From the sequence record MW735835.1: 64,000 bases of DNA. One strand, written 5' to 3'. Below the pieces are notes generated by a model, which saw nothing but the letters and a program-made list of their open reading frames with translations, was not told the origin of the DNA and did no database searches. Of the stretch, positions 45,814-63,958 are shown piece by piece; position 1 is the first letter of the stretch, and every line of letters begins with the position of its first letter. The position numbers and the translations under genes were made by a program.

Positions 45814-45861
45814 CATAAGAGGGAGCCCTAGGGCTCCCTCTAGCTTTCTTTTTTCTTTTTT
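45814..45861. terminator. Bidirectional terminator
   Basis: cataagagggagccc-ta-gggctccctctag plus T-tract, between the convergent ATP-grasp and endolysin genes. Confidence 0.7.
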
Positions 45862-47235: not shown

Positions 47236-47805
47236 CTAAAGGTCTTTGACGACGTAGTACTCGTGCAGCAGACTCAGCCGCATCTCTTCCGTCACGTGCG
47301 TCACGCTGTGCTGGATATAGCTGGGGAAGATGTAGACATCACCAGCTTTGGGTGAGATGCGATAGTTGCCGAAATGGAACTGACGCATGGGTTTGGGATA
47401 CCCGCGACATGCGTTACCACGAGGGTCGAACATGTTCAAACCATTTGCCGAGTCCGACGGGTAGCAAATTGCCGACAGGACAGACCCGGGATGGTAATGC
47501 GGATACAGGCCTTCACCGCTTTCGATCCACTTGCCATTGGTCTCGACGTAGAACTCTTCCATGCTGGTGCCGAAGGCATGCTTGGAGAACTCTTTGACCG
47601 CCGGAGTGATCACGTCGTCACGGATCTCGATGATCAGTGGCATGACATCGCGCAGGACTTTCACCTGCGAGGCGTCTTCGCCCTGGGTCATGGTGAACAG
47701 CAGGAAGATCTCTTCTGCGTAGGCTTCCATGTCGAAGCGGTCAGCCACGTTGAAGTGTGCAATCTCGGTTTTCCACGGTTGGATGATTTCCACGTTACGC
47801 TCCAT
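47236..47805 (-). CDS. Putative Fe(II)/2OG-dependent oxygenase (PF13759/TIGR02466-like)
   Basis: YPHYHPGSVLSAICYP...PKAGDVYIFPSYIQHSV; start uncertain (47805 or 47826). Confidence 0.75.
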   Translation of the reverse strand: MERNVEIIQPWKTEIAHFNVADRFDMEAYAEEIFLLFTMTQGEDASQVKVLRDVMPLIIEIRDDVITPAVKEFSKHAFGTSMEEFYVETNGKWIESGEGLYPHYHPGSVLSAICYPSDSANGLNMFDPRGNACRGYPKPMRQFHFGNYRISPKAGDVYIFPSYIQHSVTHVTEEMRLSLLHEYYVVKDL

Positions 47806-48226
47806 TAACAGAAATGATGCCCTCATCCGTGCACTCGAGCAGACAGTACCGGACAGTCTGCGGAGCCCAACCCGAATTGATCCAATCAGGGATCTCCTTT
47901 AGACGCTCAATAATGGCGTCGTAGGTGGCTTGGTCTTGGTCGTAAGTGACGAAGTAAGGATCTTGACCCAGGAACAGGTCCTCATCACGCAAGGTCTCGT
48001 AAATGTCAATCCCGAAGAGTTCATTCAGCTTGTAGGCGTAAATGATCGCTACCGAGTAAGACTTGGCCGGGTAGTAAAGCGGGAAGGTCGCCTCTTTGAA
48101 GTAGTGCAGGGCGTTTTCGATCTTCTCCTCGCTCTCGACCATCTCCATCAACTCGAAGTCGTCGGTGTGGTCTCGGACAAGTTGGTTGTACAGGCGCTGG
48201 TTGTCTTTATACGGATGGGAACTCAT
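47795..48226 (-). CDS. Hypothetical acidic protein in the modification cluster
   Basis: ORF overlapping both neighbours; FPLYYPAKSYSVAIIYA block. Confidence 0.65.
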   Translation of the reverse strand: MSSHPYKDNQRLYNQLVRDHTDDFELMEMVESEEKIENALHYFKEATFPLYYPAKSYSVAIIYAYKLNELFGIDIYETLRDEDLFLGQDPYFVTYDQDQATYDAIIERLKEIPDWINSGWAPQTVRYCLLECTDEGIISVNGA

Positions 48227-48644
48227 AGTTGCTCACAAACGAGATGCGCAACTCATCATGAGGTGACCGCTCAACATGATGCAACAGTCGAGCTGAGAAG
48301 ATGACCAAGCGGCCTTCCTTCGGGTGCACACGGTGATGGTTGCCTTGTTGATCGTGGATCACCAATGGTCCTTCGGCATCCAGTAGGTAGAGTACCGAAG
48401 TGAACACATGAGGCAGGTGATCATGAGGGGTGAGGCCTCCCGGACCGATGTGCACGTGGTTCGCACAGATGACCAAGTCCTGGAGTTGCAGATGCTGCTG
48501 CGTCAGGGGCAGGATTGTTTCGTCCGCCCACTTGATCAGGTCTTCATTGATCACGACATCTTTGTCGATCTCGCAGAAAGCCTGATCTACGACCCAGTCG
48601 GGGACAGGTATCCCTTCAACCTGGAAGAACAAAGGCTCGTTCAT
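48207..48644 (-). CDS. Putative Fe(II)/2OG-dependent oxygenase (PF13759-like)
   Basis: TPHDHLPHVFTSVLYL...PKEGRLVIFSARLLHHV; ATGA overlap at 48641-48644. Confidence 0.75.
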   Translation of the reverse strand: MNEPLFFQVEGIPVPDWVVDQAFCEIDKDVVINEDLIKWADETILPLTQQHLQLQDLVICANHVHIGPGGLTPHDHLPHVFTSVLYLLDAEGPLVIHDQQGNHHRVHPKEGRLVIFSARLLHHVERSPHDELRISFVSNYEFPSV

Positions 48645-49666
48645 ACCAGCACGTCCCATTTATTTTTCATGTTGACAAGGCAGGTATCGTGCTTGAGATG
48701 ATTCATGACCGCATGGATATCGCCACGCGCACAACGATCCAAATGCAAGCACTTCCCACACTCAGGCGAATGACTGCGCTGCACCAACTGCTCGAAGTAC
48801 ATCTCTTCTTCGAACTGCTCGAGGTTGATCCCAATCCATGGCTTCTTCAGTTCGAAGTCTGGCGCAAAGATGGGGAACTTCTCGATCAAGGTAGGTGTGT
48901 AGTACAACTTGCCTTGTCGGTAGGTAGCCTCCAGACTGTCCGTCTTGGGCTTGATCAGGAACCGGTTGTACTGGGTATCCTTGCAGGCCTGAATGACGTC
49001 ACAGAAGCGACTGAAGGCGTTCAGGAATGCTTGCCGGTTGACGAGGTCATCGAAGCCCTTACGCACATGCGGAAACACGTACTCGACCAAACGACGCATG
49101 CCGAATTCCAGCTCATGGATTTGCTGATTGGTCTCCACGGAGAAGTTCTCAATGGAGTCGCCAGTCATGTTCACCGTCAGGTACAGCAGCTCGAACTTCA
49201 CGTCCGGCAGGTGGTCAATCACGTACCGGACACGCTGACGGATCAAGTCCTGGTGCTTAGGGTTGTTGATACTCTTGAGCGGGAAGGGTGTCGCCAAGGT
49301 GAAAGACTTGCCTTTCATCAGGACGTTGATCTTCTCGCAGAGCACATCGAGCCCTGTGTCGTCTAACAAGGCCAAGGGCAATACCACGCTGTCAAAGCGT
49401 TCAGCGAGTCCCTGGATCAGAGCATGTTCCAGGATACCGACACTCGCCTTAGAGGCAATGACGTCCACCGGACCAATGGTGAACTCCCGCAAGCGGTAGC
49501 CTTCCTGCTTCATGTCATCGACCAGATCCAACAGATCCCGTCGATCTTTGTTGAACGGACCGGGATCGAAGTCCCGGTCTACCATGCAACCCACGCAGTG
49601 GTACTTACAGCCTTGAAGAATCTCAAGCGTCAGGTTGAACGCTCTGTTCGGAACCAGTGCTGACAT
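48641..49666 (-). CDS. Degenerate radical SAM-like protein
   Basis: CKYHCVGC (CX3CX2C); GPVD in place of GGEP; C-terminal CGKCLHLDRC...C. Confidence 0.65.
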   Translation of the reverse strand: MSALVPNRAFNLTLEILQGCKYHCVGCMVDRDFDPGPFNKDRRDLLDLVDDMKQEGYRLREFTIGPVDVIASKASVGILEHALIQGLAERFDSVVLPLALLDDTGLDVLCEKINVLMKGKSFTLATPFPLKSINNPKHQDLIRQRVRYVIDHLPDVKFELLYLTVNMTGDSIENFSVETNQQIHELEFGMRRLVEYVFPHVRKGFDDLVNRQAFLNAFSRFCDVIQACKDTQYNRFLIKPKTDSLEATYRQGKLYYTPTLIEKFPIFAPDFELKKPWIGINLEQFEEEMYFEQLVQRSHSPECGKCLHLDRCARGDIHAVMNHLKHDTCLVNMKNKWDVLV

Positions 49667-50672
49667 ATTGGAGCCCTACCAGGCAGTCTTTTATTTTCAT
49701 GCGTTCCATGATGTTGATGATGCCCTTCTCACTGCAACTGGACATGTAGACGCAGGACATGCATGGCGTATCTGCCAGATAGTCCAGGGCGCGTTCTAGG
49801 GCCTTCTGACGGGTGTTCAGAAGATTCTCCATAGTCCAGGGGCGGGGAATGACGAAGTCGTCTTCTAGGAAGGGACAATCGTCTTTGAGGAAGGGTACCC
49901 AGTACAGCTTGCTGTCGGTGTACAGCAAGTTCACCATAGTGCCGGTGTGGTAGCAGAGATCGGGGTTACGGCGGCGCTCATCCTCACCCGACAGACCCGA
50001 GTAGAACTGGGTGATGCGGTGAGACATACGCTTGATGTTCTGGGCGACCATCAGGTCCTTCACTGGCACACGCCCGTACGGGATGTTCAGGATGTCGTCC
50101 TTGTCCACCGGGAAGTCGACCTTGAAACCGTTCTTCATCATCTCGTCGAAGTCTTCGCCCACGGTGTCCGTGGTGCAGTTGACCACAAAGCCTGCTTCGT
50201 TGAGGTAGGCCTTTTTCAAGTGCTCCTTCACGAAGTCCAGCTTGGAGACGATCATCTTGCTGAACTTGTCCGACTTGAAGAACGATGGCGCAGCTGGCAT
50301 CAGGAACCGCACAGCCTTGCCGGGTATGGCCTCGTCGATCTCTTCGCACATGACCTTGTACAGGTCCATGTTCTTCTCAAGGAACGCCGCGTTGAAGGTG
50401 ACCTGATGAAACCCCTGAGCCATCTCACGGAACACCGGATGTTCCATGACCTCAGCCACGTTGTCCGCAGACATGTAGTCGGTCGGGCCGATCCCCATGT
50501 CGAACGCCACGTAGCCATTGGCCACCATTTCGTTGACCAAGGCAGCCAGTTTAGGAATGTCATCGACATCCCCTCCCAACTCACGGTCAATCATGCAGCC
50601 GGCGCAATGGTTCGCGCAACCCCGGAAGATGTCCAGGGTGATTTCCAGCCGTTGACGATGTTGTACGATCAT
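49623..50672 (-). CDS. Degenerate radical SAM-like protein (paralog of 48641..49666)
   Basis: CANHCAGC; GPTD; C-terminal CMSCVYMSSC...C. Confidence 0.65.
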   Translation of the reverse strand: MIVQHRQRLEITLDIFRGCANHCAGCMIDRELGGDVDDIPKLAALVNEMVANGYVAFDMGIGPTDYMSADNVAEVMEHPVFREMAQGFHQVTFNAAFLEKNMDLYKVMCEEIDEAIPGKAVRFLMPAAPSFFKSDKFSKMIVSKLDFVKEHLKKAYLNEAGFVVNCTTDTVGEDFDEMMKNGFKVDFPVDKDDILNIPYGRVPVKDLMVAQNIKRMSHRITQFYSGLSGEDERRRNPDLCYHTGTMVNLLYTDSKLYWVPFLKDDCPFLEDDFVIPRPWTMENLLNTRQKALERALDYLADTPCMSCVYMSSCSEKGIINIMERMKIKDCLVGLQYVSTGSEQSVQPDA

Positions 50673-51601
50673 TTCTTACGTCCAGCCCAATTGTCCAATA
50701 GACCCCGGAAGCCGTTACAGGAATTCTTCAGGGAGGTGACTTCACGCAAGTGTTCGGAAAGGCAGTTGCCAAAGTACGGGCAGGAGGAGCAGAAGGGATT
50801 GTCTTGGACCCGGTCGCGTTCAAAACCACACCAGTCCAGATACCCTTGTACTCCATCGACCGTCAGGAAATACTCACGGTCGTCCTTGTCGAACTCCAGT
50901 ACTGCAAAATCCCCAGAGGGCGTGATGTAGATGTGGTCGTCGCTGAATGCATTGCGCTTACCTTCTACCGCCTCTTTTACTTGGGTCTCGTTCTCGAAGT
51001 AGAACTTGCGTGCAGGATGCTTGATCACTGCCCATACAAACTCTTCGAATTCCTTGAACGACACCTCGTGCTCGTTAGCCTGGTTGGTGCTGTACGGCTT
51101 GATCTCACACCCCATGAGGTGCGGGAACATGTTCATCGTCTCGACGTAATCGTCAGGCGTTGTCTTATCGAGGAACGCACGACTGGCCAGCGTCAGCACG
51201 TTGAAGCGCTGACTCAGCAGGAACATGTTGTTCAACACCAGCTCATGTTTCTCACGGGCTTCGAAGTCGTACGACACCGAGATCATGAACGCCTTGTCAT
51301 GGACGATGTCTGGCACGTGAGACAGGTTGGTCACCAGCACGATGTCAGTGATCCCACGGGTCAACAGAACCTGCTTGACGCCAATGAGGTACTCTTGAGG
51401 CAGCACCAGCACCTCACCACCGTAGATGTCGACATGACCAATTTCGAAGTGCTCCATCAGAGCATCGAGCCGATCAGCAAAGACATCCACAGGCAACAGA
51501 GTGCGGTCGCTTAACTGTTGCTCGGTGAGGTAACAAAACGAGCACCGGAAGTTGCAGTAGTACCAGGGGTTGAAGCTGATGTTGAGGCTGGGTTTGGCCA
51601 T
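50669..51601 (-). CDS. Radical SAM protein with truncated SPASM-like C-terminus
   Basis: CNFRCSFC, YGGE, C-terminal CSSCPYFGNC...C. Confidence 0.85.
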   Translation of the reverse strand: MAKPSLNISFNPWYYCNFRCSFCYLTEQQLSDRTLLPVDVFADRLDALMEHFEIGHVDIYGGEVLVLPQEYLIGVKQVLLTRGITDIVLVTNLSHVPDIVHDKAFMISVSYDFEAREKHELVLNNMFLLSQRFNVLTLASRAFLDKTTPDDYVETMNMFPHLMGCEIKPYSTNQANEHEVSFKEFEEFVWAVIKHPARKFYFENETQVKEAVEGKRNAFSDDHIYITPSGDFAVLEFDKDDREYFLTVDGVQGYLDWCGFERDRVQDNPFCSSCPYFGNCLSEHLREVTSLKNSCNGFRGLLDNWAGRKK

Positions 51602-51780
51602 GATTGCAACGATTCCAGGAAGCGGCGTTGGTAGGGATGCAGGGGCTTGGTGTGACCGAGCGCCATCTCGGCAAAATCAGCGAGGTTGTCTCGGCAACGC
51701 TTGACGACTACTTTCTTGAGGACTTCGGGGATCTCAAGCTTGAGTTCGTATCCCGGAGGGAAGAATGCCATTTGATCCAT
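51511..51780 (-). CDS. Small hypothetical protein overlapping the next radical SAM start
   Basis: AAAGGT RBS; fills a 180-nt gap, then overlaps 50669..51601 by 91 nt. Confidence 0.45.
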   Translation of the reverse strand: MDQMAFFPPGYELKLEIPEVLKKVVVKRCRDNLADFAEMALGHTKPLHPYQRRFLESLQSWPNPASTSASTPGTTATSGARFVTSPSNS

Positions 51781-51782
51781 GA

Positions 51783-52874
51783 TTAACCTTTCGCGATGAG
51801 TTGGACGGATTCGTCCTCGTAAGGGGTCGGTGTCAGATGGGCCGACATGCCATTGATCTCGATGATCTTGGCTGCCTGACTCTTCATCTTCCGACAGTGG
51901 TGTTCGGTCAAGCCAAACCGCTTGGTGTCCGAGATGGTCTTACGGCAACCATTGCAGATGGCAAACATCGGGCAGATGTAGCAGGATTCCTTCATCGACT
52001 GAAGGTGTTCCTGATCCCGTAACGGCAGGACCAGTTCCTTGCCAGACATCTCGGTCTCGAAGTCAATCGGGAACGCCATGTCGTCAGCAAAGGCACCGCA
52101 GGAGAAGTAATGACCACCGGGCTGCAAGGTACGGATACCTTCATCGCAGTTGCGAGCCAGAGGACACGTGGTGTGCTTGCCTTTAAGGCGCTTGGCCATC
52201 TGTTTGGTGTTGTACTCCCACTCCATCAGACCGGCTTCGTAGATCTGGATGTAGTGGCCGTAGATATCGGCTTGGGTGAAGAAGTTGTTCTCACTACCCA
52301 TCACCGTGCCGCGGTTGTTCACTTCAGGCCCAGAGGCCACGACATGGTTCACCTTGGCCTCGACACCCATCTCCTTGGCCAGCCTGACCGTATCCAAGAC
52401 AGTGTGCTCGTTGTCCTTGTCGATCACCGCAATGAAGTCCAAGCGGTAGCCGATGCGTTCAAAGAACAGGTCCGAGACCTTACGGAAATCCTCTTCAGTG
52501 AACGGCGTACCATCACCCTTCAGGCGTTTGTCGCCGTATTGGAACGACGTGGTGATGCCCAGACGTTCATGCTTGAACAACTCTTCCCACATCTCGGGCT
52601 TCTTGTAGAAAGCCCAGAGGTTAGAAGTGAAGCTGATGGATGCATCGCAGTTGTTGCGGTCCAGGATGGCGATCATGTCCCAGTAGTACTGGGGCGGCAT
52701 CATCAGAGGATCGCCACCGTTGACGATGATGGTGTTGGTATCGGGGAAGCGCTGAATGAAGCGTTCGATCTGATCCAGCTCAACGATGTCCTTGGGGTCC
52801 TCGGACAGGTAAGTACTGGAGCAGAACGTGCACTTGAAGTTACAGGCTACCGTTGGCTTGACGATGAGATCCAA
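51783..52874 (-). CDS. Radical SAM/SPASM-domain protein
   Basis: TTG start after AGGAG; CNFKCTFC, NGGDP, CPLARNC...GHYFSC, CYICPMFAICNGC...C. Confidence 0.9.
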   Translation of the reverse strand: MDLIVKPTVACNFKCTFCSSTYLSEDPKDIVELDQIERFIQRFPDTNTIIVNGGDPLMMPPQYYWDMIAILDRNNCDASISFTSNLWAFYKKPEMWEELFKHERLGITTSFQYGDKRLKGDGTPFTEEDFRKVSDLFFERIGYRLDFIAVIDKDNEHTVLDTVRLAKEMGVEAKVNHVVASGPEVNNRGTVMGSENNFFTQADIYGHYIQIYEAGLMEWEYNTKQMAKRLKGKHTTCPLARNCDEGIRTLQPGGHYFSCGAFADDMAFPIDFETEMSGKELVLPLRDQEHLQSMKESCYICPMFAICNGCRKTISDTKRFGLTEHHCRKMKSQAAKIIEINGMSAHLTPTPYEDESVQLIAKG

Positions 52875-53019
52875 TTGCCTGCTCCTGAGGTTGAGTGGTC
52901 CAAAGGTTGAAGTAATCGCGCTTGTCGATCTTGTCCGGGTTCTCGATAGTGAGTTGTTTCAGCTTCTCGGCTATTTCTTTTTCGGACATCTTGAGAAAAT
53001 TACGGGGAGGTACGGCCAT
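52840..53019 (-). CDS. Small hypothetical protein (59 aa) heading the second sub-operon
   Basis: GAGGG RBS before ATG 53019; overlaps the radical SAM start by 35 nt. Confidence 0.5.
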   Translation of the reverse strand: MAVPPRNFLKMSEKEIAEKLKQLTIENPDKIDKRDYFNLWTTQPQEQAIGSHRQANGSL

Positions 53020-53082
53020 GGCAGTCACCCTCTTTAAAGAAAAGATTCATAAGAAAGGTTCCGCATGTTTTAAGACACACGG

Positions 53083-53113
53083 CATAAAGGCCCGGTCTAG
53101 CCGGGCCCCTATG
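53083..53113 (-). terminator. CATA-family hairpin splitting the modification cluster
   Basis: cataaaggcccgg-tctag-ccgggcccctatg directly after the stop at 53117. Confidence 0.65.
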
Positions 53114-53116
53114 TTG

Positions 53117-54118
53117 TCACGCAAGGATCACCTTGAACATGGCCTTGATCGAGCAGTCTTTCGACTTCTCGCCCAGGACCGTGTCATGCAGGAAACACCG
53201 TAGGCCACAGCGCTGATAGAACTCGCAACTGAAGCACCCGTAGTGTTCCACAAATGTCACTTCTGCGTTGTCCTTCGCGATCAGGCCTTCCTTCTCATCG
53301 AGGATTGCATCTTTGCCCGCTTCAGACCAACAGGTACTGATCACCCCATCCTTGTTGATGATCTTGGTGGAACGGCACGTGGTCTCGTTGACGACGTTAC
53401 GTTTCCAGTCCTTGATCGGATAGGAGTTCGGGTACTTGTCGTTCAGCTTGATGTACAGCTGACTGATCAGGTCTTCGTCGGGTTGATGATAGGCGTACAG
53501 CTGACTGGGGATGTAATGATCGAAGTACACGTCGTACTTGTCACAGAGCCAGACGAACTCGTCACCTTCCTTGCCATCGAGGAAGATTTGGATGTTCTGC
53601 TTGGTGATCACCACGTTGACCGTCTGAACGTACTCGCCCAGGACTTCGAGGTTCTGGAAGAACAGTTCACGCTGAGCACCATTGAAGCGCCCAGCAGGGT
53701 CGTAGGACGTGGCTAGCCAAACACGTGGGTCGATCAGCCGGAGCCGTTCGATCAGGTGCTTGACGCGGTCGGTGTTGTGGTAGACGAGATTGGTACCGAA
53801 GACCAACTTGACATCCTTGAAGTGTTCCAAGCACATCTTGCCGACTTGGTAGTACGCCTCGAAGACGTCATCACCAATCTCGTTCATGAACAGTTCACCG
53901 CCGGTGATGTTGACCACCATAGCCGTGTCTGGGTGCGTGGTTGCCAAGAGCTTGGCAGCCTTCTCGATCATCAGATCCCCGTCGAGACCCACTTTGGAAT
54001 CATGGTCCTGGTGGCAGAACGAGCAACGCATGTTGCACAGCTCGAACAGGATCAGGTGGGCTTCTTTCCACTTGCCCTTCTTGTCACGCAGGATGTCTAC
54101 AACAGGGATCAGGTCCAT
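53117..54118 (-). CDS. Radical SAM/SPASM-like protein
   Basis: CNMRCSFC, TGGE, TCRS...STCW, CFSCEFYQRCGLRC...C; TAATG overlap at 54118. Confidence 0.88.
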   Translation of the reverse strand: MDLIPVVDILRDKKGKWKEAHLILFELCNMRCSFCHQDHDSKVGLDGDLMIEKAAKLLATTHPDTAMVVNITGGELFMNEIGDDVFEAYYQVGKMCLEHFKDVKLVFGTNLVYHNTDRVKHLIERLRLIDPRVWLATSYDPAGRFNGAQRELFFQNLEVLGEYVQTVNVVITKQNIQIFLDGKEGDEFVWLCDKYDVYFDHYIPSQLYAYHQPDEDLISQLYIKLNDKYPNSYPIKDWKRNVVNETTCRSTKIINKDGVISTCWSEAGKDAILDEKEGLIAKDNAEVTFVEHYGCFSCEFYQRCGLRCFLHDTVLGEKSKDCSIKAMFKVILA

Positions 54119-55173
54119 TACCAACGCGCTCCGGTGAGAGCCGCCTTCAGGCCTGCCAGGTCAGTGGTCAGGATGTGGCGGATCAGGTTCTCGTCGTACT
54201 TGCCGGTGTCACGCATCGCCAGGGCAATACGCATCTCGCCAGCAAACATGTCGGTCACACGACGCAGGCAGTTCTCGGGTTCACGCATGTTGGCTTCGTC
54301 GTTCAGCAGCGAGAGGATCTGAGCAGCACGGCGGGACGAGGATTCGTCTTCGAGCTGGTGCATCAGTTCAACGGCCTCCATCAGCATGCCCTTGATCCAG
54401 ACGTCGGTCGGACGGAAGTCGTACAGGCCCGGACGGAGCAACTGTTGAGACGCCAGGTGCGGCAGATTGAGGCAACCTTCGAACACGGTCGGTGCGTTCA
54501 GCAAGGTGTCGACGTCGGCGCCGGCCAGTTCCCAGTTCTCGGGACGGGTCAGGTGACGAGCCCAGACGTCCATGGCATCGTGGGCGTTCGACAGTGCGAT
54601 ACGACGCAGGATGTTCTTGGTGGTCTTCGGGATCTTGCCGACACGGGCATCGGTACGCAGGCGAGCAATGTGCCACTCCAGCGAGAGGGCTTCCGGGTTA
54701 CGGAGTACCAGCTCGTTCATGGCCTCTTGCAGCGGTTCGTCCTTGTCGAACAGCGCCTGCACGACCTTGGTGTCGATCTTGATGCTGGACAGCACATCGA
54801 CGCGAGGTTCGCCCATGGCGACGATCAGGCTGTTGAAGGTGGCCTTCTTGCACACGAAGAACCAACGGAAGTTCTCGAAGTCGATCTTCGGGAACAACGC
54901 CTTGATCAACATGGCGTACAGGCGGGTATAGGTGTCGCTGTCGCAGTACACCATGACCTTGTCCTTGCTCTCGAGCGCTGCACCGAAGACCTCGGTGAAT
55001 TGCTCGGGTTCGAACTGGTCGAGGCTCTGGGCGAAACCCAGCTGCACACCGACTTCTTCGAACTCGCCCGGGCTGTGTTTCCAGCCGATCTGGGGCGAGA
55101 TGGTAATGACGTTCTTCGAGCGGTCAATCCGCAGTTCGGAGTCGACGTACGCCTGGTTAAACAGATGGTACAT
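54118..55173 (-). CDS. Hypothetical protein in the modification cluster
   Basis: 351-aa strongly biased ORF overlapping both neighbours; no motif recognised. Confidence 0.7.
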   Translation of the reverse strand: MYHLFNQAYVDSELRIDRSKNVITISPQIGWKHSPGEFEEVGVQLGFAQSLDQFEPEQFTEVFGAALESKDKVMVYCDSDTYTRLYAMLIKALFPKIDFENFRWFFVCKKATFNSLIVAMGEPRVDVLSSIKIDTKVVQALFDKDEPLQEAMNELVLRNPEALSLEWHIARLRTDARVGKIPKTTKNILRRIALSNAHDAMDVWARHLTRPENWELAGADVDTLLNAPTVFEGCLNLPHLASQQLLRPGLYDFRPTDVWIKGMLMEAVELMHQLEDESSSRRAAQILSLLNDEANMREPENCLRRVTDMFAGEMRIALAMRDTGKYDENLIRHILTTDLAGLKAALTGARW

Positions 55174-56032
55174 GTTCGATACCTTTCAGGACATTGAGGT
55201 TGGACTGGAGTTCCGCACGTCCAGCTTGCTCGAGTCGAACCAGCTGCTCGGGTTCGCTCAGCGACAGCAGACCCAGGAAGTAGGGGTTGTGCTCGCTATC
55301 GAAGAAGGCGAACAGGTTCTTGCCGGCGAAGCAGTACTCGTTGAAGAACATCTTGTTCCAGCACCAGTCTTCTTCCGGGATGTCTTGCATCAGCACCGGG
55401 AACAACGGGTGTTGGATGAGCTTCACGAAGTTCAGGCCCAGCAGGCTTTCACCTTCGATCTCGGGGTAGTTGGCTACCTGATCCTTCAGCGTGGCGTAGC
55501 TGTGCAGGGCGTAGACCGGGACCATGCAGACGTTCTGCATCCAGGTCTCGAGGATGTCGCGATGCTCCTCGATGAACGGGACGGGATTGAACGGCAGCAG
55601 GTAAGGCTTGCCCGACGCAGCCAAAAGCAAGTTGATGGCCAGGTCTTCCATCTCAGGCAGATTCACCATGGAGGTGATGTAGAGATAGTCCTTCAGCATG
55701 TCCAACTTGGCTTCCAGCGAGGAGAACTTGATCTCGCACTTGATGTCCAGGTTGGTTAGGTAGGTGATCAGCACACTGCCTTTGTACTTGCTGTTGTCGT
55801 AGTCGACGATGAACTTCACGTTCTCCGAGAACTTACGCTTGAGCGTCAGCATCGGGATCGGAACGGTCACTTCGAGCACGACCAACTTGTCCCGCCACTC
55901 CTGCTCTTCTTTCAAGAGCAGTTTGTATTCCAGCTTCATGCCGAGAGACATGCTGTTCAGGCGCTCTCGGTCTTTTCTCGGATTGCCGGTCAACTTGTGC
56001 CGTTTGCGGAACTCGTCGAGTTGCTTCTCCAT
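55157..56032 (-). CDS. Hypothetical protein in the modification cluster
   Basis: AGGAG RBS; 291 aa; no motif recognised. Confidence 0.7.
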   Translation of the reverse strand: MEKQLDEFRKRHKLTGNPRKDRERLNSMSLGMKLEYKLLLKEEQEWRDKLVVLEVTVPIPMLTLKRKFSENVKFIVDYDNSKYKGSVLITYLTNLDIKCEIKFSSLEAKLDMLKDYLYITSMVNLPEMEDLAINLLLAASGKPYLLPFNPVPFIEEHRDILETWMQNVCMVPVYALHSYATLKDQVANYPEIEGESLLGLNFVKLIQHPLFPVLMQDIPEEDWCWNKMFFNEYCFAGKNLFAFFDSEHNPYFLGLLSLSEPEQLVRLEQAGRAELQSNLNVLKGIEHVPSV

Positions 56033-56044
56033 GGTGAACTCCTA

Positions 56045-56581
56045 TTACCGGCGGCCGCGAGCAGAGTGACAGCTCGTGTGGCAGCTGGTGTGACAGATGG
56101 TATTTTGCAGGGTGAGGACCTGTGCACGGCAGGCATTCTGATAAGCGCTCAGGAGAGCGTTACATGCGTTGTTATAGACGTTGAGGTCCATGTTGGTGCC
56201 TTCGGTCAGAGCGCCGAGGTTAGCACCAGAGGCGAAATCCACTCCATAGACCGTATGACCAACAGCGGTCACATCGAAGATCAGTTCCTGACCAACAGCG
56301 TAATGGGTACGCCAGATCAGGACACGGCACGTCCGAATACCACTGAATAGGTTGGCCACGTAACGAAGAACCTGGGTGGCTTGCAGTGCTTGCGGCTCAC
56401 CGGCGGTGAATTGCTCGGTAGCGAACAGTGCGCCTTTGCCACCGGTAGTGCCAGCGAACCAGCCTGGCAGGCCATTCGGCGGTACGTTGTTGGTACCCCA
56501 GGCGATACCGGCGTTCATGTTGTTGCTGAGAATCGTGTTGGCGTTGGCAGCCAGTCGACTCCGACGAATCACTTCGGTCAT
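56045..56581 (-). CDS. Candidate radical SAM substrate/precursor with C-terminal (CHxS)3-type motif
   Basis: Ends TICHTSCHTSCHSARGRR; starts 1 nt after the stop of the SPASM gene. The CDS is well supported; the substrate role is inferred. Confidence 0.7.
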   Translation of the reverse strand: MTEVIRRSRLAANANTILSNNMNAGIAWGTNNVPPNGLPGWFAGTTGGKGALFATEQFTAGEPQALQATQVLRYVANLFSGIRTCRVLIWRTHYAVGQELIFDVTAVGHTVYGVDFASGANLGALTEGTNMDLNVYNNACNALLSAYQNACRAQVLTLQNTICHTSCHTSCHSARGRR

Positions 56582-56582
56582 A

Positions 56583-57623
56583 TCACACCTTCAGAATCAG
56601 ATTGGTCTGTTGCGTTCGACCGGAGAGGTAACGCAGGGTGTTCTTGAGACCCCCACAGCGACCCTTCTGCCAAGGCAGTCGGTGACAGTCGCCCCCACAC
56701 AGATCAAACACGTCGCACGTAATGCACGTATCGCCCCAAGTCAGTTCTTTGGCTTGTTGCTCCACCCGGCCATCCGAAATAAGGAAAGCGTCGACACCAT
56801 CCTCCAAGCGTGCATGGTGCAGCTTAGCGGCAGCGTTAGGGCAACCAGACAAAGAACCGTCCGAGTTGATGGTCACCAGGTTCTGCTCGCAGTTGCGGCA
56901 GTTGGTGTCCACCTTGACGACGTTCTTCTTGAGCTTTTCCTCGAGGATGTCGAGGGTCTTGATGCGCACACGTGGCTTGCGTTCTTTGTAGCGCAGGTAC
57001 AGCGCAAGGTACCAGTTGTCCTGGTCCTCATTGTTAGGGAAGATCTCGGGGTTATCGACAGCACTGCCATCGTTGGTCAACCGTTCCAAGGACGCTTCAT
57101 CCACTGCAAAGCTGTCCAACTGGTCCATCAGCCAATCGGGCGACATGGCGATGAGTTGCTTGCTGACCGACACCTTGACATTGATGCCCACGCCGTGGGA
57201 CTTCAGGGTCTCGAGGTTCTTCTTCCATAGCTGGAACTGCTTGTCGTTGCTCCAGCGAATCCAGTGGTCCCAGCTGGTCCCAATGAATGCACCGAAGTAA
57301 TCCTTGATGAAGGCGATGTGCTCATCCGTCAACTTGAAGGTCAGGTTGCTGGCGGCACACATCGACACGTTCGGCAGATCCACGAAGTGATCAGCGAAAC
57401 GCTTGAGCTTTTCCAACGGGACCAGGAACGGTTCCCCACCATGGAACTCCATGTGGTAGTGCGTGCTCTTGGGGTACTTGGACATGAAGTCCTTCACCCA
57501 ATCGCTGACCTGGTCCGGATCGAACGGGGTCTTATCCCCGGCCTTGCCGTTGGTGAAACAATGCTGACAGTTCAGATTGCAAGTGCCCGTGGTCTTGACA
57601 TAGATGGTTTTGTAGGCGTTCAC
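56583..57623 (-). CDS. Radical SAM/SPASM-domain maturase
   Basis: CNLNCQHC, FHGGEPFL, NCRNC...GSLSGCP, CITCDVFDLCGGDC...C; GTGA overlap with the JmjC gene. Confidence 0.92.
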   Translation of the reverse strand: MNAYKTIYVKTTGTCNLNCQHCFTNGKAGDKTPFDPDQVSDWVKDFMSKYPKSTHYHMEFHGGEPFLVPLEKLKRFADHFVDLPNVSMCAASNLTFKLTDEHIAFIKDYFGAFIGTSWDHWIRWSNDKQFQLWKKNLETLKSHGVGINVKVSVSKQLIAMSPDWLMDQLDSFAVDEASLERLTNDGSAVDNPEIFPNNEDQDNWYLALYLRYKERKPRVRIKTLDILEEKLKKNVVKVDTNCRNCEQNLVTINSDGSLSGCPNAAAKLHHARLEDGVDAFLISDGRVEQQAKELTWGDTCITCDVFDLCGGDCHRLPWQKGRCGGLKNTLRYLSGRTQQTNLILKV

Positions 57624-58126
57624 AGCTTCGCTTCCAAAAAGAGTTCCAAGCCGAAACTAATCATCAGGGAACTGTCGACATTGATGGCCTGGTGAAGTTC
57701 ACCACGCGGAATATGGATGCTGTCCCCGGCAGTGAGTTCGATCTCGCCATCAGGGAACTTGAAAACTTTACGGCCTTCGACCATGTAGATGACGACGTCA
57801 TCTAGGTCTGTGTGCATCGGGAAGCTGACGCCCCCTTTCGGCGAAATGAAAAGATGAGCGCTCACTGGCCCCACGTGTCCGAAATGCGCAGCAAGCCGCG
57901 CACAGTTCTGGAACATGGTGGCATTGAGGCGCTCGATCCCTTCGATCTTGACCGGGCAATCGCTGTTCTCCAGGAAGTCAGACTGACTGTAGAGGTCGAA
58001 CGATTGCGCGTTCTTGATGTATTTCACCAGGCACTGCTCGTACAGATGCGGGCTTGACAGCAGAAGGTCCACATCGAGAAGCTCAGGAGTGATCCCCTCG
58101 AATTGAAAACCAAGACGTTCGAACAT
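57620..58126 (-). CDS. JmjC/cupin-type Fe(II)/2OG hydroxylase
   Basis: SFPMHTDLDDV (HxD), MVEGRKVF, GDSIHIPRGELHQA (distal His); start ATG 58126 with GAGGG RBS. Confidence 0.8.
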   Translation of the reverse strand: MFERLGFQFEGITPELLDVDLLLSSPHLYEQCLVKYIKNAQSFDLYSQSDFLENSDCPVKIEGIERLNATMFQNCARLAAHFGHVGPVSAHLFISPKGGVSFPMHTDLDDVVIYMVEGRKVFKFPDGEIELTAGDSIHIPRGELHQAINVDSSLMISFGLELFLEAKL

Positions 58127-59748: not shown

Positions 59749-59816
59749 GGATTACTCCATTTCCTAAAAGGGGATCGAATAATGACACGCTCCGCCGAAA
59801 CGGAGCGTGTTCATGG

Positions 59817-63694: not shown

Positions 63695-63958
63695 TTACGG
63701 GATGTCCATATCACTGGAGCCTGTGGCTCCGTGGCCGCACGAGGCGACGCTTCCGACCCGAGTCACGGGAATGCCATTGATCGTCATCCAAGGACTTGCT
63801 GTGGAGATTACAGGGGCGTTGTGAGGGGGTTGTCCGTGGCCACTGACGCCATCACCCAGCAACGAGATGGGTTTACCGTTCCAGGTCCAATTGGGAGCGC
63901 CTGGTCCAGTGATCACAGCGCCAGCAGAGTCGGCTCCGACTAACGATACGATGCCCAT
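63695..63958 (-). CDS. PAAR-like tail spike tip protein
   Basis: NGKPISLLGDGVSGHG...PH...INGIPVTRVGSVASCGH, a PAAR-type fold with His/Cys metal ligands. Confidence 0.85.
   Translation of the reverse strand: MGIVSLVGADSAGAVITGPGAPNWTWNGKPISLLGDGVSGHGQPPHNAPVISTASPWMTINGIPVTRVGSVASCGHGATGSSDMDIP

What the first reader, a model, noticed from the sequence alone, without database searches (positions are those of the whole stretch)
47236..58126. Phage-encoded RiPP-like biosynthetic cluster: six radical SAM proteins, three oxygenases and a Cys/His-motif substrate
Seen directly: six co-oriented genes carry CX3CX2C (56583, 53117, 51783, 50669, 49623, 48641). All have a C-terminal CX2CX5C-type auxiliary cluster motif, and the first three also retain upstream SPASM cysteines. 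There is one JmjC-type (HxD...H) and two PF13759-like (HxH...H) oxygenases, four unknown ORFs, two small ORFs, and a protein ending CHTSCHTSCHSARGRR. Established: radical SAM-SPASM enzymes mostly modify peptides or proteins (thioether and C-C cross-links in sactipeptides, ranthipeptides and triceptides), and JmjC/2OG enzymes hydroxylate residues. Inference: a multi-step post-translational modification pathway run by a lytic jumbo phage. I know of no characterised phage pathway of this kind, though similar loci may exist unannotated in related phages.
Basis: partly seen in the sequence, partly recalled or inferred. Interest (0 to 1): 0.95.

Follow-up and report, generated by a model that had tools for sequence, protein, structure and literature searches.

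The report
Phage cassette that modifies a virion protein
A jumbo Pseudomonas phage carries a block of radical-SAM enzymes and oxygenases beside a protein with an invariant Cys-His tail; the same block occurs in over a hundred other phages and in predatory Bdellovibrionota bacteria, and probably modifies a virion protein in an undescribed way.

Summary
The window is Pseudomonas phage pPa_SNUABM_DT01. On the minus strand, 47236-58126 holds a cupin/JmjC-like gene, four clear SPASM-type radical SAM genes, two divergent probable ones, two PF13759 oxygenases and gp065, which ends CHTSCHTSCHSARGRR.

The cluster is not a one-off. The order cupin, rSAM, Cys-His-tail protein, gp064, gp063, three rSAMs, gp055, oxygenase recurs in at least 128 IMG/VR contigs and 12 cultured jumbo phages. 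It also recurs in 34 genome contigs, about 24 of them Bdellovibrionota, where it lies among housekeeping genes. The 16-residue tail is invariant while the protein bodies are only 20-30% identical.

The enzymes sit nearest to protein- and peptide-modifying SPASM enzymes: anaerobic sulfatase maturase, cyclophane synthases and sactisynthases. All lie far below every family cut-off, and none has a leader-recognition domain.

gp065 is predicted to be a folded domain of unknown fold with a flexible tail. Its Agrobacterium phage Atu_ph07 homologue is a virion protein that peaks in the top gel band.

Best reading (confidence 0.55): a maturation cassette for a virion protein, usually encoded straight after fibre genes. 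It is not a small secreted RiPP. The chemistry is unknown. Verdict: new variant of a known kind, interest 0.8.

The parts
59817..62210 (-). gp069, tail-fibre-like virion protein (context; first gene of the co-oriented run)
   Evidence: PHROG 2163 and 13857, E 2.5e-139 and 3e-116. Found with gp068 directly upstream of the cassette in 29 related loci.
58174..59748 (-). gp068, tail-fibre-like virion protein directly upstream of the cassette
   Evidence: PHROG 2163, E 1.4e-139. The C-terminus ending ...VWPPLWQD is shared by the gene before the cupin in the DT01-like and RSF1-like loci.
57620..58126 (-). gp067, cupin/JmjC-like Fe(II) oxygenase (the ORF could start at 58177)
   Evidence: Pfam Cupin_2 at 37.1 bits and JmjC_2 at 33 bits. 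H105, D107 and H145 are at least 90% conserved in 54 relatives. Present in 79 of 88 loci.
56583..57623 (-). gp066, SPASM radical SAM enzyme A, always next to the Cys-His-tail gene
   Evidence: CX3CX2C at residues 15-22 plus 8 conserved auxiliary Cys. PHROG 1802, E 3.9e-53. The family profile's best solved relatives are anaerobic sulfatase maturase 4k36 (E 2.8e-10), 8vpo, ChlB 9gm3 and 5wgg. Present in 87 of 88 loci.
56045..56581 (-). gp065, 178-aa carrier protein with the Cys-His tail; candidate substrate and probable virion protein
   Evidence: AlphaFold pLDDT 89.9, with a folded alpha/beta domain over residues 1-163. No fold neighbour in the PDB. No Pfam, NCBIfam or PADLOC hit. The Atu_ph07 homologue gp170 is in the virion proteome.
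56048..56095 (-). The 16 C-terminal codons of gp065 (CHTSCHTSCHSARGRR): proposed modification site
   Evidence: In 88 relatives, Cys at -16, -12 and -8 is 88/88. His at -15 and -11 is 88/88, and at -7 is 87/88. Ser at -13 is 85/88. Arg at -4, -2 and -1 is 88/88 (the set was partly selected on the motif). pLDDT here is 54-68.
55157..56032 (-). gp064, core protein of unknown fold that always follows the tail protein
   Evidence: PHROG 20767, E 7e-41. Present in 86 of 88 loci. AlphaFold pLDDT 91.4. No significant PDB neighbour and no PDB sequence hit. Its Atu_ph07 homologue gp169 is not in the virion list.
54118..55173 (-). gp063, core protein of unknown function
   Evidence: BLAST finds it in 42 loci. 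A profile comparison also finds it in the Bdellovibrionota cassette (hhalign probability 98.8%). No PDB or Pfam hit.
53117..54118 (-). gp062, SPASM radical SAM enzyme B
   Evidence: CX3CX2C plus 7 conserved auxiliary Cys. PHROG 1802, E 3.5e-31. Present in 83 of 88 loci.
52840..53019 (-). gp061, small annotated ORF; doubtful, not conserved
   Evidence: No relative in any other locus. No family hit.
51783..52874 (-). gp060, SPASM radical SAM enzyme C (the best conserved)
   Evidence: PF04055 at 53.5 bits. 8 conserved auxiliary Cys. The family profile aligns end to end with anaerobic sulfatase maturase 4k36 (E 1.6e-6). Present in 74 of 88 loci, and 44-69% identical in the genome contigs, Bdellovibrionota among them.
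51511..51780 (-). Unannotated 89-aa ORF between gp060 and gp059; uncertain
   Evidence: Relatives occur only in 4 closely related loci. No family hit. It overlaps the start of gp059 by 91 bases (51511-51601) in another frame.
50669..51601 (-). gp059, radical SAM enzyme D with one auxiliary-cluster motif
   Evidence: PF04055 at 32.2 bits. CX3CX2C plus 4 conserved C-terminal Cys. Present in 70 of 88 loci.
49623..50672 (-). gp058, divergent probable radical SAM enzyme (clade-specific)
   Evidence: CX3CX2C plus 4 conserved C-terminal Cys. Paralogue of gp057 (E 9e-33). No Pfam hit. Present in 26 of 88 loci.
48641..49666 (-). gp057, divergent probable radical SAM enzyme (clade-specific)
   Evidence: PF04055 at E 4.3e-4, below the cut-off. 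10 of 27 family members hit PF04055 weakly. The profile comparison with the gp066 family matches only the C-terminal Cys region.
48207..48644 (-). gp056, 2OG-Fe(II) oxygenase (PF13759/PF13640)
   Evidence: Pfam 28 and 27.9 bits. H74, H76, H122 and R133 are conserved. Present in 19 of 88 loci.
47795..48226 (-). gp055, core protein of unknown function
   Evidence: PHROG 20737, E 7e-39. Present in 63 of 88 loci and in Bdellovibrionota. Invariant residues are D21, Y51, P52, K54, S55, Y62, D88, Y94, Y101 and E130. No PDB hit.
47236..47826 (-). gp054, 2OG-Fe(II) oxygenase (PF13759), usual last gene of the cassette
   Evidence: Pfam 46.6 bits. H110, H112, H173 and R183 are conserved. Present in 58 of 88 loci.
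46576..47226 (-). gp053, unknown; follows the cassette only in close relatives (neighbour, probably not part)
   Evidence: Present in 11 of 88 loci. No family hit.
45864..46589 (-). gp052, transglycosylase / baseplate-hub lysozyme-like protein (neighbour; end of the co-oriented run)
   Evidence: PHROG 4928 (E 2.4e-66) and PHROG 196 baseplate hub (E 1.3e-37). A hairpin at 45818-45841 closes the run.

Best explanation
The cluster is a conserved maturation cassette for one protein, gp065. gp065 is a folded carrier domain of about 160 residues with a flexible 16-residue C-terminal tail: three Cys-His-x-x units followed by Arg-Gly-Arg-Arg.

Inferred mechanism:
- The SPASM radical SAM enzyme encoded next to gp065 (gp066) and its paralogues gp062, gp060 and gp059 act on this tail in the infected cell. 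In this clade gp057 and gp058 may act too.
- Each enzyme would abstract a hydrogen atom and form intramolecular bonds. These could be thioethers from the cysteines and/or three-residue His-to-C-beta rings of the triceptide type on the His-x-Ser units.
- The cupin and the 2OG oxygenases would add hydroxyl groups.
- gp064, gp063 and gp055, which have no known fold or catalytic motif, would act as partners. They may stand in for the missing leader-recognition domain.

The product is not released. It stays on the protein and goes into the virion. There, given where the genes lie, it probably belongs to the fibre/baseplate apparatus as a rigid, possibly metal-binding or covalently anchoring knot.

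Shown: the genes, motifs and family placement; the conserved gene order; the invariant tail; the predicted fold; the virion location of one homologue.

Inferred: that the tail is the substrate; the kind of bonds formed; the role in the virion.
For: 1. Gene order and co-occurrence. The rSAM-A gene and the tail-protein gene are adjacent in 87 of 88 phage loci, and gp064 follows in 86. The same families sit beside the motif gene in all 34 genome contigs.
2. The tail is invariant while the bodies are 20-30% identical (mean column identity 14%). Its variable positions hold only small residues.
3. gp066 and gp060 family profiles match anaerobic sulfatase maturase best. That is a protein-modifying SPASM enzyme without an RRE. 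Next come ChlB (a triceptide synthase) and 5wgg. The top NCBIfam hits are peptide and protein maturases. The CX3CX2C motif starts at residues 11-31, which leaves no room for an N-terminal RRE.
4. The gp065 model has pLDDT 89.9, with a folded domain and a low-confidence tail.
5. In Atu_ph07, gp170 (the homologue) was found in virions with 8 peptides and 35% coverage. It is most abundant in gel band 1, whereas other proteins of about 30 kDa peak in bands 7-8. The enzymes gp171, gp168, gp165, gp172 and gp169 are absent from the list.
6. 64 of 74 phage loci have a fibre-like gene directly upstream. One of these families is homologous to Atu_ph07 gp176, itself a virion protein.
7. There is precedent for a protein-sized rSAM substrate with His-x-Ser repeats: HxsA of the HXS system (PMC13128918). 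His-x-x cyclophanes made by YhhB, HaaB and HtkB are a second precedent (PMC11499958).
8. Accessory tailoring genes vary between loci, as in biosynthetic clusters: a B12-binding rSAM, extra 2OG oxygenases and halogenase-like genes.
Against: - No modification has been observed on any member.
- The Atu_ph07 gel buffer lists no reducing agent. The high-mass species may therefore be ordinary disulfide-linked multimers of a Cys-rich tail.
- Virion location is shown for one distant homologue only (22% identity in the body).
- In Bdellovibrionota the cassette lies among housekeeping genes with no fibre gene in view. A link to fibres is therefore not obligatory.
- Cys/His repeats are also classic metal ligands, so the tail could bind a metal without being modified.
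- All matches to characterised rSAM families are far below their cut-offs, so the reaction type cannot be read from homology.
- gp057 and gp058 are not securely radical SAM enzymes.
Confidence: 0.55

Rival explanations
1. Released RiPP or peptide-derived cofactor. The C-terminal 16 residues are modified, cut off the carrier and act as a small molecule, such as an antibiotic, a metallophore or a redox cofactor. That molecule would serve both the phage and the predatory bacteria.
For: - Repeated core motifs at the C-terminus, multiple rSAMs and variable tailoring enzymes are typical of RiPP clusters.
- The cassette occurs chromosomally in Bdellovibrionota without fibre genes.
- gp060 and gp066 weakly match DynA and DarE, which make BamA-targeting peptides.
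Against: - No protease, transporter or RRE was found in the cassette in DT01, S13, Atu_ph07 or L123.
- The carrier is 125-318 residues long with a conserved, confidently predicted fold.
- The Atu_ph07 homologue is itself in the virion with 35% coverage.
- In 64 of 74 phage loci the genes lie inside the fibre/baseplate module.
Confidence: 0.14
2. The tail is a metal or iron-sulfur binding site, not a substrate. gp065 would be a scaffold or carrier, for example one that delivers clusters to the many Fe-S enzymes. The radical SAM enzymes would modify something else, such as the upstream fibre proteins or a small molecule.
For: - Cys and His spaced four apart are good ligands, and the cassette needs two to three [4Fe-4S] clusters per enzyme.
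- Marine T4-like phage genomes rich in rSAM genes also carry Fe-S assembly genes (PMC5332604).
- Fibre-like genes precede the cassette in 64 of 74 loci.
Against: - A cluster donor would not be expected in virions.
- Near-invariant Ser at -13, the small-residue-only variable positions and the invariant Arg-x-Arg-Arg end are not explained by metal binding alone.
- The fibre families upstream differ between lineages and are absent in Bdellovibrionota, whereas the tail protein is constant.
Confidence: 0.15
3. A functional analogue of the HXS system. The matured, basic His-x-Ser-repeat protein would bind DNA at the cell envelope. It would either escort the phage genome in, or block entry of competing phages.
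For: - HxsA is a 214-residue protein with five His-x-Ser repeats. It is matured by two rSAM enzymes plus a small partner and binds DNA in the periplasm (PMC13128918).
- gp065 has three His-x-Ser/Ala units and an Arg-rich end, and its homologue travels in the virion.
- HxsB and HxsC are among the weak NCBIfam hits.
Against: - There is no sequence relation. HxsA gives no hit. HxsB and HxsC score 26 and 25 bits against cut-offs of 370 and 268. PADLOC gives only viperin N-terminal matches.
- gp065 has no signal peptide and no peptidoglycan-binding domain.
- The invariant cysteines have no counterpart in HxsA as the paper describes it.
Confidence: 0.08
4. The enzymes make a modified nucleotide, DNA base or enzyme cofactor, and gp065 is unrelated to them.
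For: - rSAM enzymes take part in thymidine hypermodification in some phages (PMC8989533).
- MoaA, QueE and viperin models give weak N-terminal hits.
- S13 has two true DHFR genes inside its cassette.
Against: - Those hits cover only the shared rSAM core. Full-length matches are to SPASM peptide and protein maturases.
- No kinase, glycosylase, transferase or other DNA-modification gene is conserved in the cassette.
- The DHFR genes are peculiar to the S13/RSF1 group.
- This reading does not explain the strict linkage to an invariant peptide tail.
Confidence: 0.04

Closest known systems
HXS anti-phage system (HxsA with His-x-Ser repeats, matured by rSAM enzymes HxsB and HxsC with HxsD; Nat Commun 2026, PMC13128918)
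   Same: A protein-sized substrate, not a short peptide. Short tandem His-x-Ser units. More than one radical SAM enzyme plus a non-enzymatic partner. The modification stays on the protein, which then acts outside the cytoplasm.
   Different: - No detectable homology of substrate or enzymes.
- Here each unit carries an invariant Cys, and the repeats lie at the extreme C-terminus before Arg-x-Arg-Arg.
- Four to six rSAMs plus Fe(II) oxygenases, against two rSAMs.
- Encoded by phages and Bdellovibrionota, not by enterobacterial defence islands.
- No signal peptide or peptidoglycan-binding domain.
Anaerobic sulfatase-maturating enzyme (anSME; PDB 4k36)
   Same: - Best solved relative of the gp066 and gp060 families, aligned end to end for gp060.
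- SPASM domain with two auxiliary clusters and no RRE.
- Acts on a Cys or Ser of a protein.
- From my own knowledge: its target motif has an Arg four residues after the Cys/Ser, as does the last Cys of the tail here.
   Different: - TIGR03942 scores 50.9 and 38 bits against a cut-off of 349.
- The Pro/Ala of the sulfatase motif is replaced by Gly, Ser, Cys or Asn.
- No sulfatase is present.
- Several paralogous enzymes act here, against one for anSME.
Triceptide (three-residue cyclophane) synthases: YhhB, HaaB, HtkB, ChlB, FxsB, AmcB
   Same: - YhhB, FxsB and AmcB are among the top NCBIfam hits for gp066 (E 3e-13 to 4e-11).
- ChlB is the best single-sequence PDB hit.
- These enzymes cross-link His C2 to the C-beta of the residue two places on, in repeated His-x-x motifs (PMC11499958). 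The tail here has three His-x-Ser/Asn/Ala units.
   Different: - Scores are far below the cut-offs (49.5 against 445).
- Triceptide precursors are short peptides.
- Cys is not part of those motifs.
- No cross-link has been observed here.
Sactipeptide and ranthipeptide synthases (5wgg; PapB) and QhpD, the maturase of the quinohemoprotein amine dehydrogenase gamma subunit
   Same: - SPASM enzymes that make Cys thioether bridges.
- PapB is a top hit for gp066, gp062 and gp059, and 5wgg is a PDB profile hit.
- From my own knowledge: QhpD cross-links a small protein that stays part of a larger assembly.
   Different: All scores are far below the cut-offs (46.8 against 340; 20.1 against 453). There are no acceptor-rich core peptides, and no dehydrogenase genes.
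Multiple PF13759 2OG-Fe(II) oxygenase genes of marine T4-like phages, and rSAM-rich marine phage genomes (PMC5332604)
   Same: The same Pfam family as gp054 and gp056. The literature records phage genomes with up to 12 rSAM genes and no assigned function. Many of the cassette-bearing contigs found here are of this marine type.
   Different: Those reports do not recognise the cassette, its Cys-His-tailed protein or its link to fibre genes.

Membership tests
Radical SAM superfamily | CX3CX2C motif binding the SAM-cleaving [4Fe-4S] cluster, in a partial TIM barrel recognised by PF04055 | tested here: met
   Met for gp066, gp062, gp060 and gp059. The motif is at least 90% conserved. PF04055 gives 53.5 and 32.2 bits above the cut-off and 27.2 and 25.0 just below. 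PHROG 1802 gives E 4e-53 to 4e-31.
Radical SAM superfamily (gp057 and gp058 only) | The same feature, for the two divergent paralogues | tested here: inconclusive
   The motif and 4 C-terminal Cys are conserved. PF04055 gives 20.9 bits or nothing. 10 of 27 relatives hit weakly. hhalign against the gp066 family matches only the C-terminal Cys region, at probability 4.5%. The Gly-Gly-Glu motif is replaced by Gly-Pro-Thr-Asp.
SPASM subfamily of radical SAM enzymes | C-terminal domain with seven cysteines for two auxiliary [4Fe-4S] clusters, including a CX2CX5CX3C block | tested here: met
   The gp066, gp062 and gp060 families keep 7-8 auxiliary Cys in that spacing. TIGR04085 scores 25.7 bits for gp066, against a cut-off of 27. 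gp059, gp058 and gp057 keep only 4 Cys, which is a one-cluster, twitch-like or partial SPASM pattern.
Anaerobic sulfatase maturase (TIGR03942) | Score above the equivalog cut-off, and a sulfatase substrate | tested here: not met
   50.9 and 38.0 bits against a cut-off of 349.45. No sulfatase gene is in the cassette.
Triceptide synthases (YhhB NF041707, FxsB TIGR04269, AmcB NF041718) | Score above the family cut-off; a short precursor with aromatic-x-x motifs; an observed loss of 2 Da per ring | tested here: not met
   49.5, 44.1 and 42.4 bits against cut-offs of 445, 370 and 425. His-x-Ser units are present. The mass change cannot be tested with these tools.
HXS defence system (HxsA, HxsB, HxsC, HxsD) | [quoted passage not shown] | tested here: not met
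   gp065 has no NCBIfam hit. HxsB scores 26.2 against 370, and HxsC 25.5 against 267.9. PADLOC has no matching system. Only the idea of a His-x-Ser repeat protein matured by rSAMs is shared.
RiPP biosynthetic gene cluster | Ribosomal precursor with a recognition (leader or follower) part and a core, encoded beside its modifying enzymes | tested here: met
   gp065 is adjacent to an rSAM in 87 of 88 loci. It has an invariant C-terminal 16-mer and a divergent body.
RiPP biosynthetic gene cluster | RRE or PqqD-like recognition domain, and proteolytic release and export of the core | tested here: not met
   No RRE, protease or transporter was detected in DT01, S13, Atu_ph07, L004, L007, L123 or L125. 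The full-length homologue is present in virions. Absence of evidence only, because three core proteins have unknown folds.
Fe(II)/2OG oxygenases and JmjC-type cupins | His-x-Asp/His ... His metal triad in a double-stranded beta-helix, plus a 2OG-binding Arg or Lys | tested here: met
   gp067 has H105, D107 and H145. gp054 has H110, H112, H173 and R183. gp056 has H74, H76, H122 and R133. All are at least 90% conserved. The Pfam hits for Cupin_2, JmjC_2 and PF13759 are above their cut-offs.
Virion structural protein | Detected in purified particles | tested here: inconclusive
   Met for the Atu_ph07 homologue gp170 (8 peptides, 35% coverage). No proteome exists for DT01. The RP31 proteome is of a phage with a different cassette.

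The most novel reading that the evidence does not exclude
Jumbo and marine myoviruses and predatory Bdellovibrionota share a dedicated pathway of several radical SAM enzymes. It would build a so far unknown covalent structure, either a Cys/His-derived cross-linked knot or a protein-bound metal or redox cofactor, on the C-terminus of a carrier protein of novel fold. Both kinds of predator would use that modified protein at the surface of the Gram-negative cell they enter. In phages it would be a component of the fibre/baseplate apparatus, possibly joined covalently to other virion proteins.
Probability: 0.25. Interest if true: 0.9.

Novelty: new variant of a known kind. Interest (0 to 1): 0.8.

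Why it matters
Radical-SAM maturation of peptides and of a few proteins is well known. A conserved cassette of about ten genes that appears to mature a phage virion protein has not been described.

If the tail is modified, it would be the first post-translational chemistry of this class in a phage particle. It would also define at least three protein families of unknown fold (gp065, gp064, gp055).

It would give a function to the many unexplained radical SAM and PF13759 oxygenase genes of jumbo and marine phages. The sharing with Bdellovibrionota points to a common need of two very different predators of Gram-negative bacteria.

The invariant 16-residue tail is a simple handle for finding every member of the family. 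Existing virion proteomics data can already test the idea.

Tried and rejected
- Fold searches of the confident models of gp065 (PDB and BFVD) and gp064 (PDB) gave no significant neighbour. BFVD returned only family members.
- Profile searches of the gp064, gp055 and gp063 families against PDB sequences gave nothing.
- PADLOC gave only viperin-type N-terminal matches, so a known defence system is rejected.
- The R2K ATP-grasp gene gp051 next to the cluster was considered as a further modifying enzyme. It is rejected because it accompanies the cassette in no other locus.
- The two DHFR genes inside the S13 cassette are true DHFRs peculiar to that group. They are treated as an insertion, not as part of the pathway.
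- The sigma-70 promoter and terminator scan was uninformative, as expected for a phage with its own RNA polymerases.
- hhalign could not join gp057 and gp058 to the other rSAMs.
- The first genome-contig scan used a narrow peptide pattern and found nothing. A degenerate DNA pattern for the tail then found 34 loci.
- The RP31 virion proteome was read, but that phage has a different rSAM set and none of its proteins was detected.
- A literature search for the tail letters returned only German words.
- Haem c attachment (Cys-x3-Cys-His) and an encapsulin-type targeting peptide were considered for the tail. Both were dropped because there is no signal peptide, cytochrome maturation gene or encapsulin gene nearby.

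A note on my own conduct: while reasoning I recalled from memory a few short consensus motifs of non-viral, non-toxin enzyme families. These were the sulfatase target motif, the haem c motif, the SPASM cysteine spacing, and the C-terminal ends of two cofactor precursors. They served only as leads, none was used as a query, and nothing was deleted.

Full report
**Identity of the window**

The region is 100% identical to Pseudomonas phage pPa_SNUABM_DT01 (MW735835.1). This is a 265,520-bp lytic jumbo myovirus with phiKZ-type RNA polymerases, and window coordinates equal record coordinates. Its describing paper says only that six radical SAM genes exist and links them loosely to DNA repair and host metabolism (PMC8541153).

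**The observation**

They form one tightly packed, co-oriented run from the two tail-fibre-like genes gp069 and gp068 (PHROG 2163, E about 1e-139) down to a baseplate-hub lysozyme-like gene, gp052.

The order of the run is:
- gp067, a cupin/JmjC-like gene
- gp066, rSAM
- gp065, 178 aa, ending CHTSCHTSCHSARGRR
- gp064 and gp063, both unknown
- gp062, rSAM
- a small ORF
- gp060, rSAM
- an unannotated 89-aa ORF
- gp059, gp058 and gp057, all rSAM
- gp056, 2OG oxygenase
- gp055, unknown
- gp054, 2OG oxygenase

Pfam, NCBIfam and PHROG support four of the rSAMs well and gp057/gp058 weakly. In alignments of 31-90 relatives per family, the CX3CX2C motif and the auxiliary cysteines are at least 90% conserved. 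gp066, gp062 and gp060 keep seven to eight auxiliary cysteines, which is the full SPASM pattern. gp059, gp058 and gp057 keep four. The metal triads of the cupin and of the two oxygenases are conserved too. The triple Cys-His unit occurs once in the window and never in shuffles.

**It is a widespread cassette**

tblastn found the gp066 enzyme in 12 distinct cultured phages of three lineages:
- DT01
- the RSL2/RSF1/FLC/S13/RsoM3USA group, infecting Ralstonia and Burkholderia
- Agrobacterium phage Atu_ph07 and Sinorhizobium phage Phosso

 In each, the gene after that enzyme encodes a protein whose body is unrelated at first sight. Its end is the same: CHSSCHTSCHGSRGRR in S13 and CHSSCHASCHNSRSRR in Atu_ph07.

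A scan of IMG/VR with an alignment of the tail proteins gave 128 confirmed viral contigs. I called ORFs in the 80 loci that were kept, plus the loci fetched earlier, and compared them with the window's proteins. The conserved order is cupin, rSAM-A, tail protein, gp064, (gp063), rSAM-B, rSAM-C, (2OG), rSAM-D, gp055, 2OG.

Counts out of 88 loci:

| Gene | Loci |
|---|---|
| gp066 | 87 |
| gp065 | 87 |
| gp064 | 86 |
| gp062 | 83 |
| gp067 | 79 |
| gp060 | 74 |
| gp059 | 70 |
| gp055 | 63 |
| gp054 | 58 |
| gp063 | 42 by BLAST (more by profile) |
| gp057 | 32 |
| gp058 | 26 |
| gp056 | 19 |

The core is therefore four rSAMs, one cupin, one oxygenase, the tail protein and three unknown proteins. 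gp057 and gp058 are an addition of the DT01-like clade.

The protein databases give the tail-protein family no name and no Pfam domain. The gp066 family is small. In 1.84 billion representative proteins there are 75 clusters at E<1e-30 and 719 at E<1e-3.

**The tail**

Among 88 tail proteins:
- Cys at -16, -12 and -8: 88/88
- His at -15 and -11: 88/88; at -7: 87/88
- Ser at -13: 85/88
- Ser or Asn at -9: 87/88
- Ser, Ala or Asn at -5: 88/88
- Arg at -4, -2 and -1, and Gly at -3: 88/88

The set was partly selected on this motif. Atu_ph07-type proteins found by other routes have Ser or Ile at -3. The other positions hold only small residues.

The bodies are 20-30% identical, with a mean column identity of 14% over 45 diverse members. 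Some members have four to six units, and several loci have two tail-protein genes in tandem.

**Not only phages**

A degenerate DNA pattern for the tail found 34 loci in the species-representative genome collection. About 24 of them are in Bdellovibrionota: Bdellovibrio, Bacteriovoracaceae, Halobacteriovoraceae and Pseudobdellovibrionaceae. These include contigs of 2.84 and 2.45 Mb. Every one of the 34 has the same rSAM families beside the motif gene, and most also have gp064 or gp055.

Where flanks are visible, the neighbours are housekeeping genes: nrdR, nusB, yceI and an E1 dehydrogenase in one locus, and lspA in another. In these predatory bacteria the cassette is therefore chromosomal and shows no sign of being a prophage. 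The remaining hits (Rhodobacteraceae, Flavobacteriaceae, Bacilli, an archaeal bin, and a 4.3-kb Dysosmobacter contig) may be phage DNA in bins or assemblies.

**What the enzymes resemble**

NCBIfam matches for gp066 and gp060 that span the whole length are to:
- anaerobic sulfatase maturase
- the cyclophane synthases YhhB, FxsB and AmcB
- DynA and DarE
- the ranthipeptide maturase PapB

Matches to MoaA, QueE, NrdG and viperin cover only the N-terminal core. Every score is far below the family cut-off, for example 50.9 against 349.

Profiles of the gp066 and gp060 families hit solved structures in this order: anaerobic sulfatase maturase 4k36 (E 2.8e-10; end to end for gp060), 8vpo, the triceptide synthase ChlB, 5wgg, then MoaA and YydG. 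The SAM-cluster motif begins 11-31 residues from the N-terminus. There is no room for the RRE domain that most RiPP rSAMs use to hold a leader peptide, and in this the enzymes again resemble the sulfatase maturase, which acts on proteins.

The enzymes therefore belong to the peptide- and protein-modifying SPASM world but to none of its named families.

**What the tail protein is**

With a 95-sequence alignment, AlphaFold2 gives gp065 a mean pLDDT of 89.9. It predicts a compact alpha/beta domain to residue 163, whose last strand runs straight into the first Cys. The tail itself has pLDDT 54-68. Foldseek finds nothing in the PDB (best E 0.18, TM below 0.2) and only uncharacterised family members in BFVD.

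gp064 is also confidently modelled (pLDDT 91.4) and has no significant neighbour. Its insignificant hit list is enriched in PP-loop ATP-pyrophosphatase folds, which I record only as a weak lead.

**Decisive outside evidence**

The virion proteome of Atu_ph07 (Attai et al. 2018, Supplementary Table S5) lists gp170, the tail-protein homologue (31.9 kDa). It was found with 8 unique peptides and 35% coverage, in gel bands 1-9, and is most abundant in band 1. In the same table, proteins of 29-34 kDa peak in bands 7-8 and proteins of 117-137 kDa peak in band 2.

The neighbouring enzymes (gp171, gp168, gp165), the cupin-position gene gp172 and the gp064 homologue gp169 are not listed. The upstream gp176 and gp177 and the baseplate wedge proteins gp181 and gp182 are listed.

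The tail protein therefore goes into the particle and the enzymes do not. In the particle it runs as a very large species that resists SDS and heat. The published loading buffer lists no reducing agent, so disulfides through the tail cysteines could explain the size. This is the main caution.

**Position in phage genomes**

In 64 of the 74 phage loci with enough upstream sequence, the gene directly before the cassette is fibre-like. It is one of two kinds:
- the gp068/gp069 family (29 loci)
- a protein of about 440 aa whose C-terminus matches tail-fibre PHROGs and is homologous to the virion protein Atu_ph07 gp176 (35 loci), usually behind a giant protein of about 2,000 aa of PHROG 358 (30 loci)

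 A minimal arrangement in a Rhodobacteraceae bin is a giant protein, two short tail proteins and one rSAM.

Accessory genes vary between loci: a B12-binding rSAM, extra oxygenases, two tryptophan-halogenase-like genes, and DHFRs in S13.

**Mechanism proposed**

Shown:
- a conserved gene set
- an invariant, flexible C-terminal tail on a folded carrier
- SPASM enzymes of the protein- and peptide-modifying kind without a leader-binding domain
- virion location of the carrier in one phage, with the enzymes absent from the particle

Inferred:
- The rSAMs modify the tail in the cell. Each unit offers a Cys thiol, a His ring and, two residues after the His, a small residue with a C-beta hydrogen.
- Two known SPASM chemistries fit. 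One is Cys thioether bridges, as in sacti- and ranthipeptides and the QhpC subunit. The other is His-C2 to C-beta rings on His-x-x, as made by YhhB, HaaB and HtkB (PMC11499958).
- The last Cys has an Arg four residues on, as in the sulfatase target motif (my own knowledge). Oxidation to formylglycine is therefore a third option.
- The cupin and the 2OG enzymes would add hydroxyls.
- gp064, gp063 and gp055 would present the substrate or carry out steps that cannot be guessed.
- The mature protein is then built into the adsorption apparatus.

The recently described HXS system is the nearest published parallel in logic. There, two rSAMs and a partner install a +8 Da change on a His-x-Ser repeat of a 214-residue protein that then acts in the periplasm (PMC13128918). 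There is no homology between the two systems.

**Rivals**

- Released RiPP or cofactor. Weakened by the missing protease, transporter and RRE, by the folded carrier, and by the protein's presence in virions.
- Metal or Fe-S site with another real substrate. Weakened by the virion location and by the conserved Ser, small-residue and Arg pattern.
- HXS-like role at DNA entry. Possible as a function, but unsupported by homology.
- Nucleotide, DNA or cofactor chemistry. No support beyond core-only hits.

**Novelty**

None of the papers found treats these genes as more than a list of "radical SAM", "Fe-S oxidoreductase", "cupin" and "2OG oxygenase" annotations. The kind of system, rSAM maturation of a ribosomal product, is known. 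Three things are new: the substrate class (a virion protein with a Cys-His tail), the multi-enzyme core with three unknown folds, and the distribution across phages and Bdellovibrionota. I rate it a new variant of a known kind, with interest 0.8. The chemistry and the role are still unproven.

They served only as leads and were never used as queries. I report this as the brief asks.

Noticed in passing
window 63695-63958 (-): An unannotated 87-aa ORF lies directly after the central spike gene gp071. The 87-aa gene at the same place in related contigs (L004, L007) hits PF05488 PAAR_motif, so DT01 probably has an unannotated PAAR spike-tip gene.
   Followed up: partly
window 45072-45809 (+): gp051 is an R2K-clade ATP-grasp protein (PF18299 at 108 bits; PF14243). 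It is convergent with the end of the cluster. It accompanies the cassette in no other locus, so it is probably unrelated.
   Followed up: yes
window 58174-62210 (-): The two fibre-like proteins gp068 and gp069 carry 4-6 copies of a repeat of about 60 residues containing NNPHxTTKAQVGLG. They share an ending (...VWPPLWQD) with the gene before the cupin in the DT01-like and RSF1-like phages.
   Followed up: partly
window 51511-51780 (-) and 52840-53019 (-): There are two small ORFs inside the cluster. The unannotated 89-aa ORF has relatives only in four close loci and overlaps the start of gp059. The annotated gp061 has no relative anywhere. Neither is part of the conserved core.
   Followed up: partly
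window 53061-53107 and 45818-45841: A GC-rich hairpin lies in the 98-base gap after gp062. A 10-pair hairpin lies between the convergent genes gp051 and gp052. These may be an internal attenuator and the end of the transcription unit.
   Followed up: no
Ralstonia phages RP12/RP31 (PMC5468394, supplementary tables): A different radical SAM set sits at the same genomic place, after two YomR-like fibre genes. It comprises a 537-aa rSAM, a sulfatase-maturase-like protein, a MoaA-like protein and an MgoB-like protein. The slot after the fibre genes seems to attract such cassettes.
   Followed up: partly
L045:3301-6439; L055:13244-15022; L063:16701-18332; L002:20403-21580: Accessory genes inside or beside the cassette differ by lineage. 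L045 has two tryptophan-halogenase-like genes. Marine-type contigs have a B12-binding radical SAM protein of 540-590 aa. Burkholderia phage S13 has two true DHFR genes.
   Followed up: partly
L106 (Dysosmobacter segnis BX15, 4,268-bp contig): A short contig in an isolate assembly of a gut anaerobe encodes proteins 62-69% identical to DT01 gp060 and gp062, and a tail protein with extra Cys-His units before the terminal three. It is probably phage DNA in the assembly rather than a gene of that bacterium.
   Followed up: no
L099, L105, L120 (Rhodobacteraceae bacterium Water_Bin34): A minimal form of the system: a giant 1,737-aa protein, two tandem short tail proteins (125-140 aa) and a single gp057-like rSAM of about 400 aa.
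   Followed up: partly
L123:6195-18886 and L101 (Bdellovibrionota): The bacterial version has extra genes of unknown function around the tail-protein gene, including a 330-aa gene before it. It is followed by a weak glycosyltransferase-8-like gene. It lies next to nrdR, nusB and yceI in one locus and lspA in the other.
   Followed up: partly
BFVD hits A0A8S5USJ7, A0A8S5USJ8, A0A8S5USV2 (Myoviridae sp. ctijX18): One uncultured myovirus has three larger proteins (504-660 aa) whose predicted structures contain the gp065 fold (Foldseek E 1e-4 to 1e-3). The carrier domain therefore also occurs fused to other parts.
   Followed up: no
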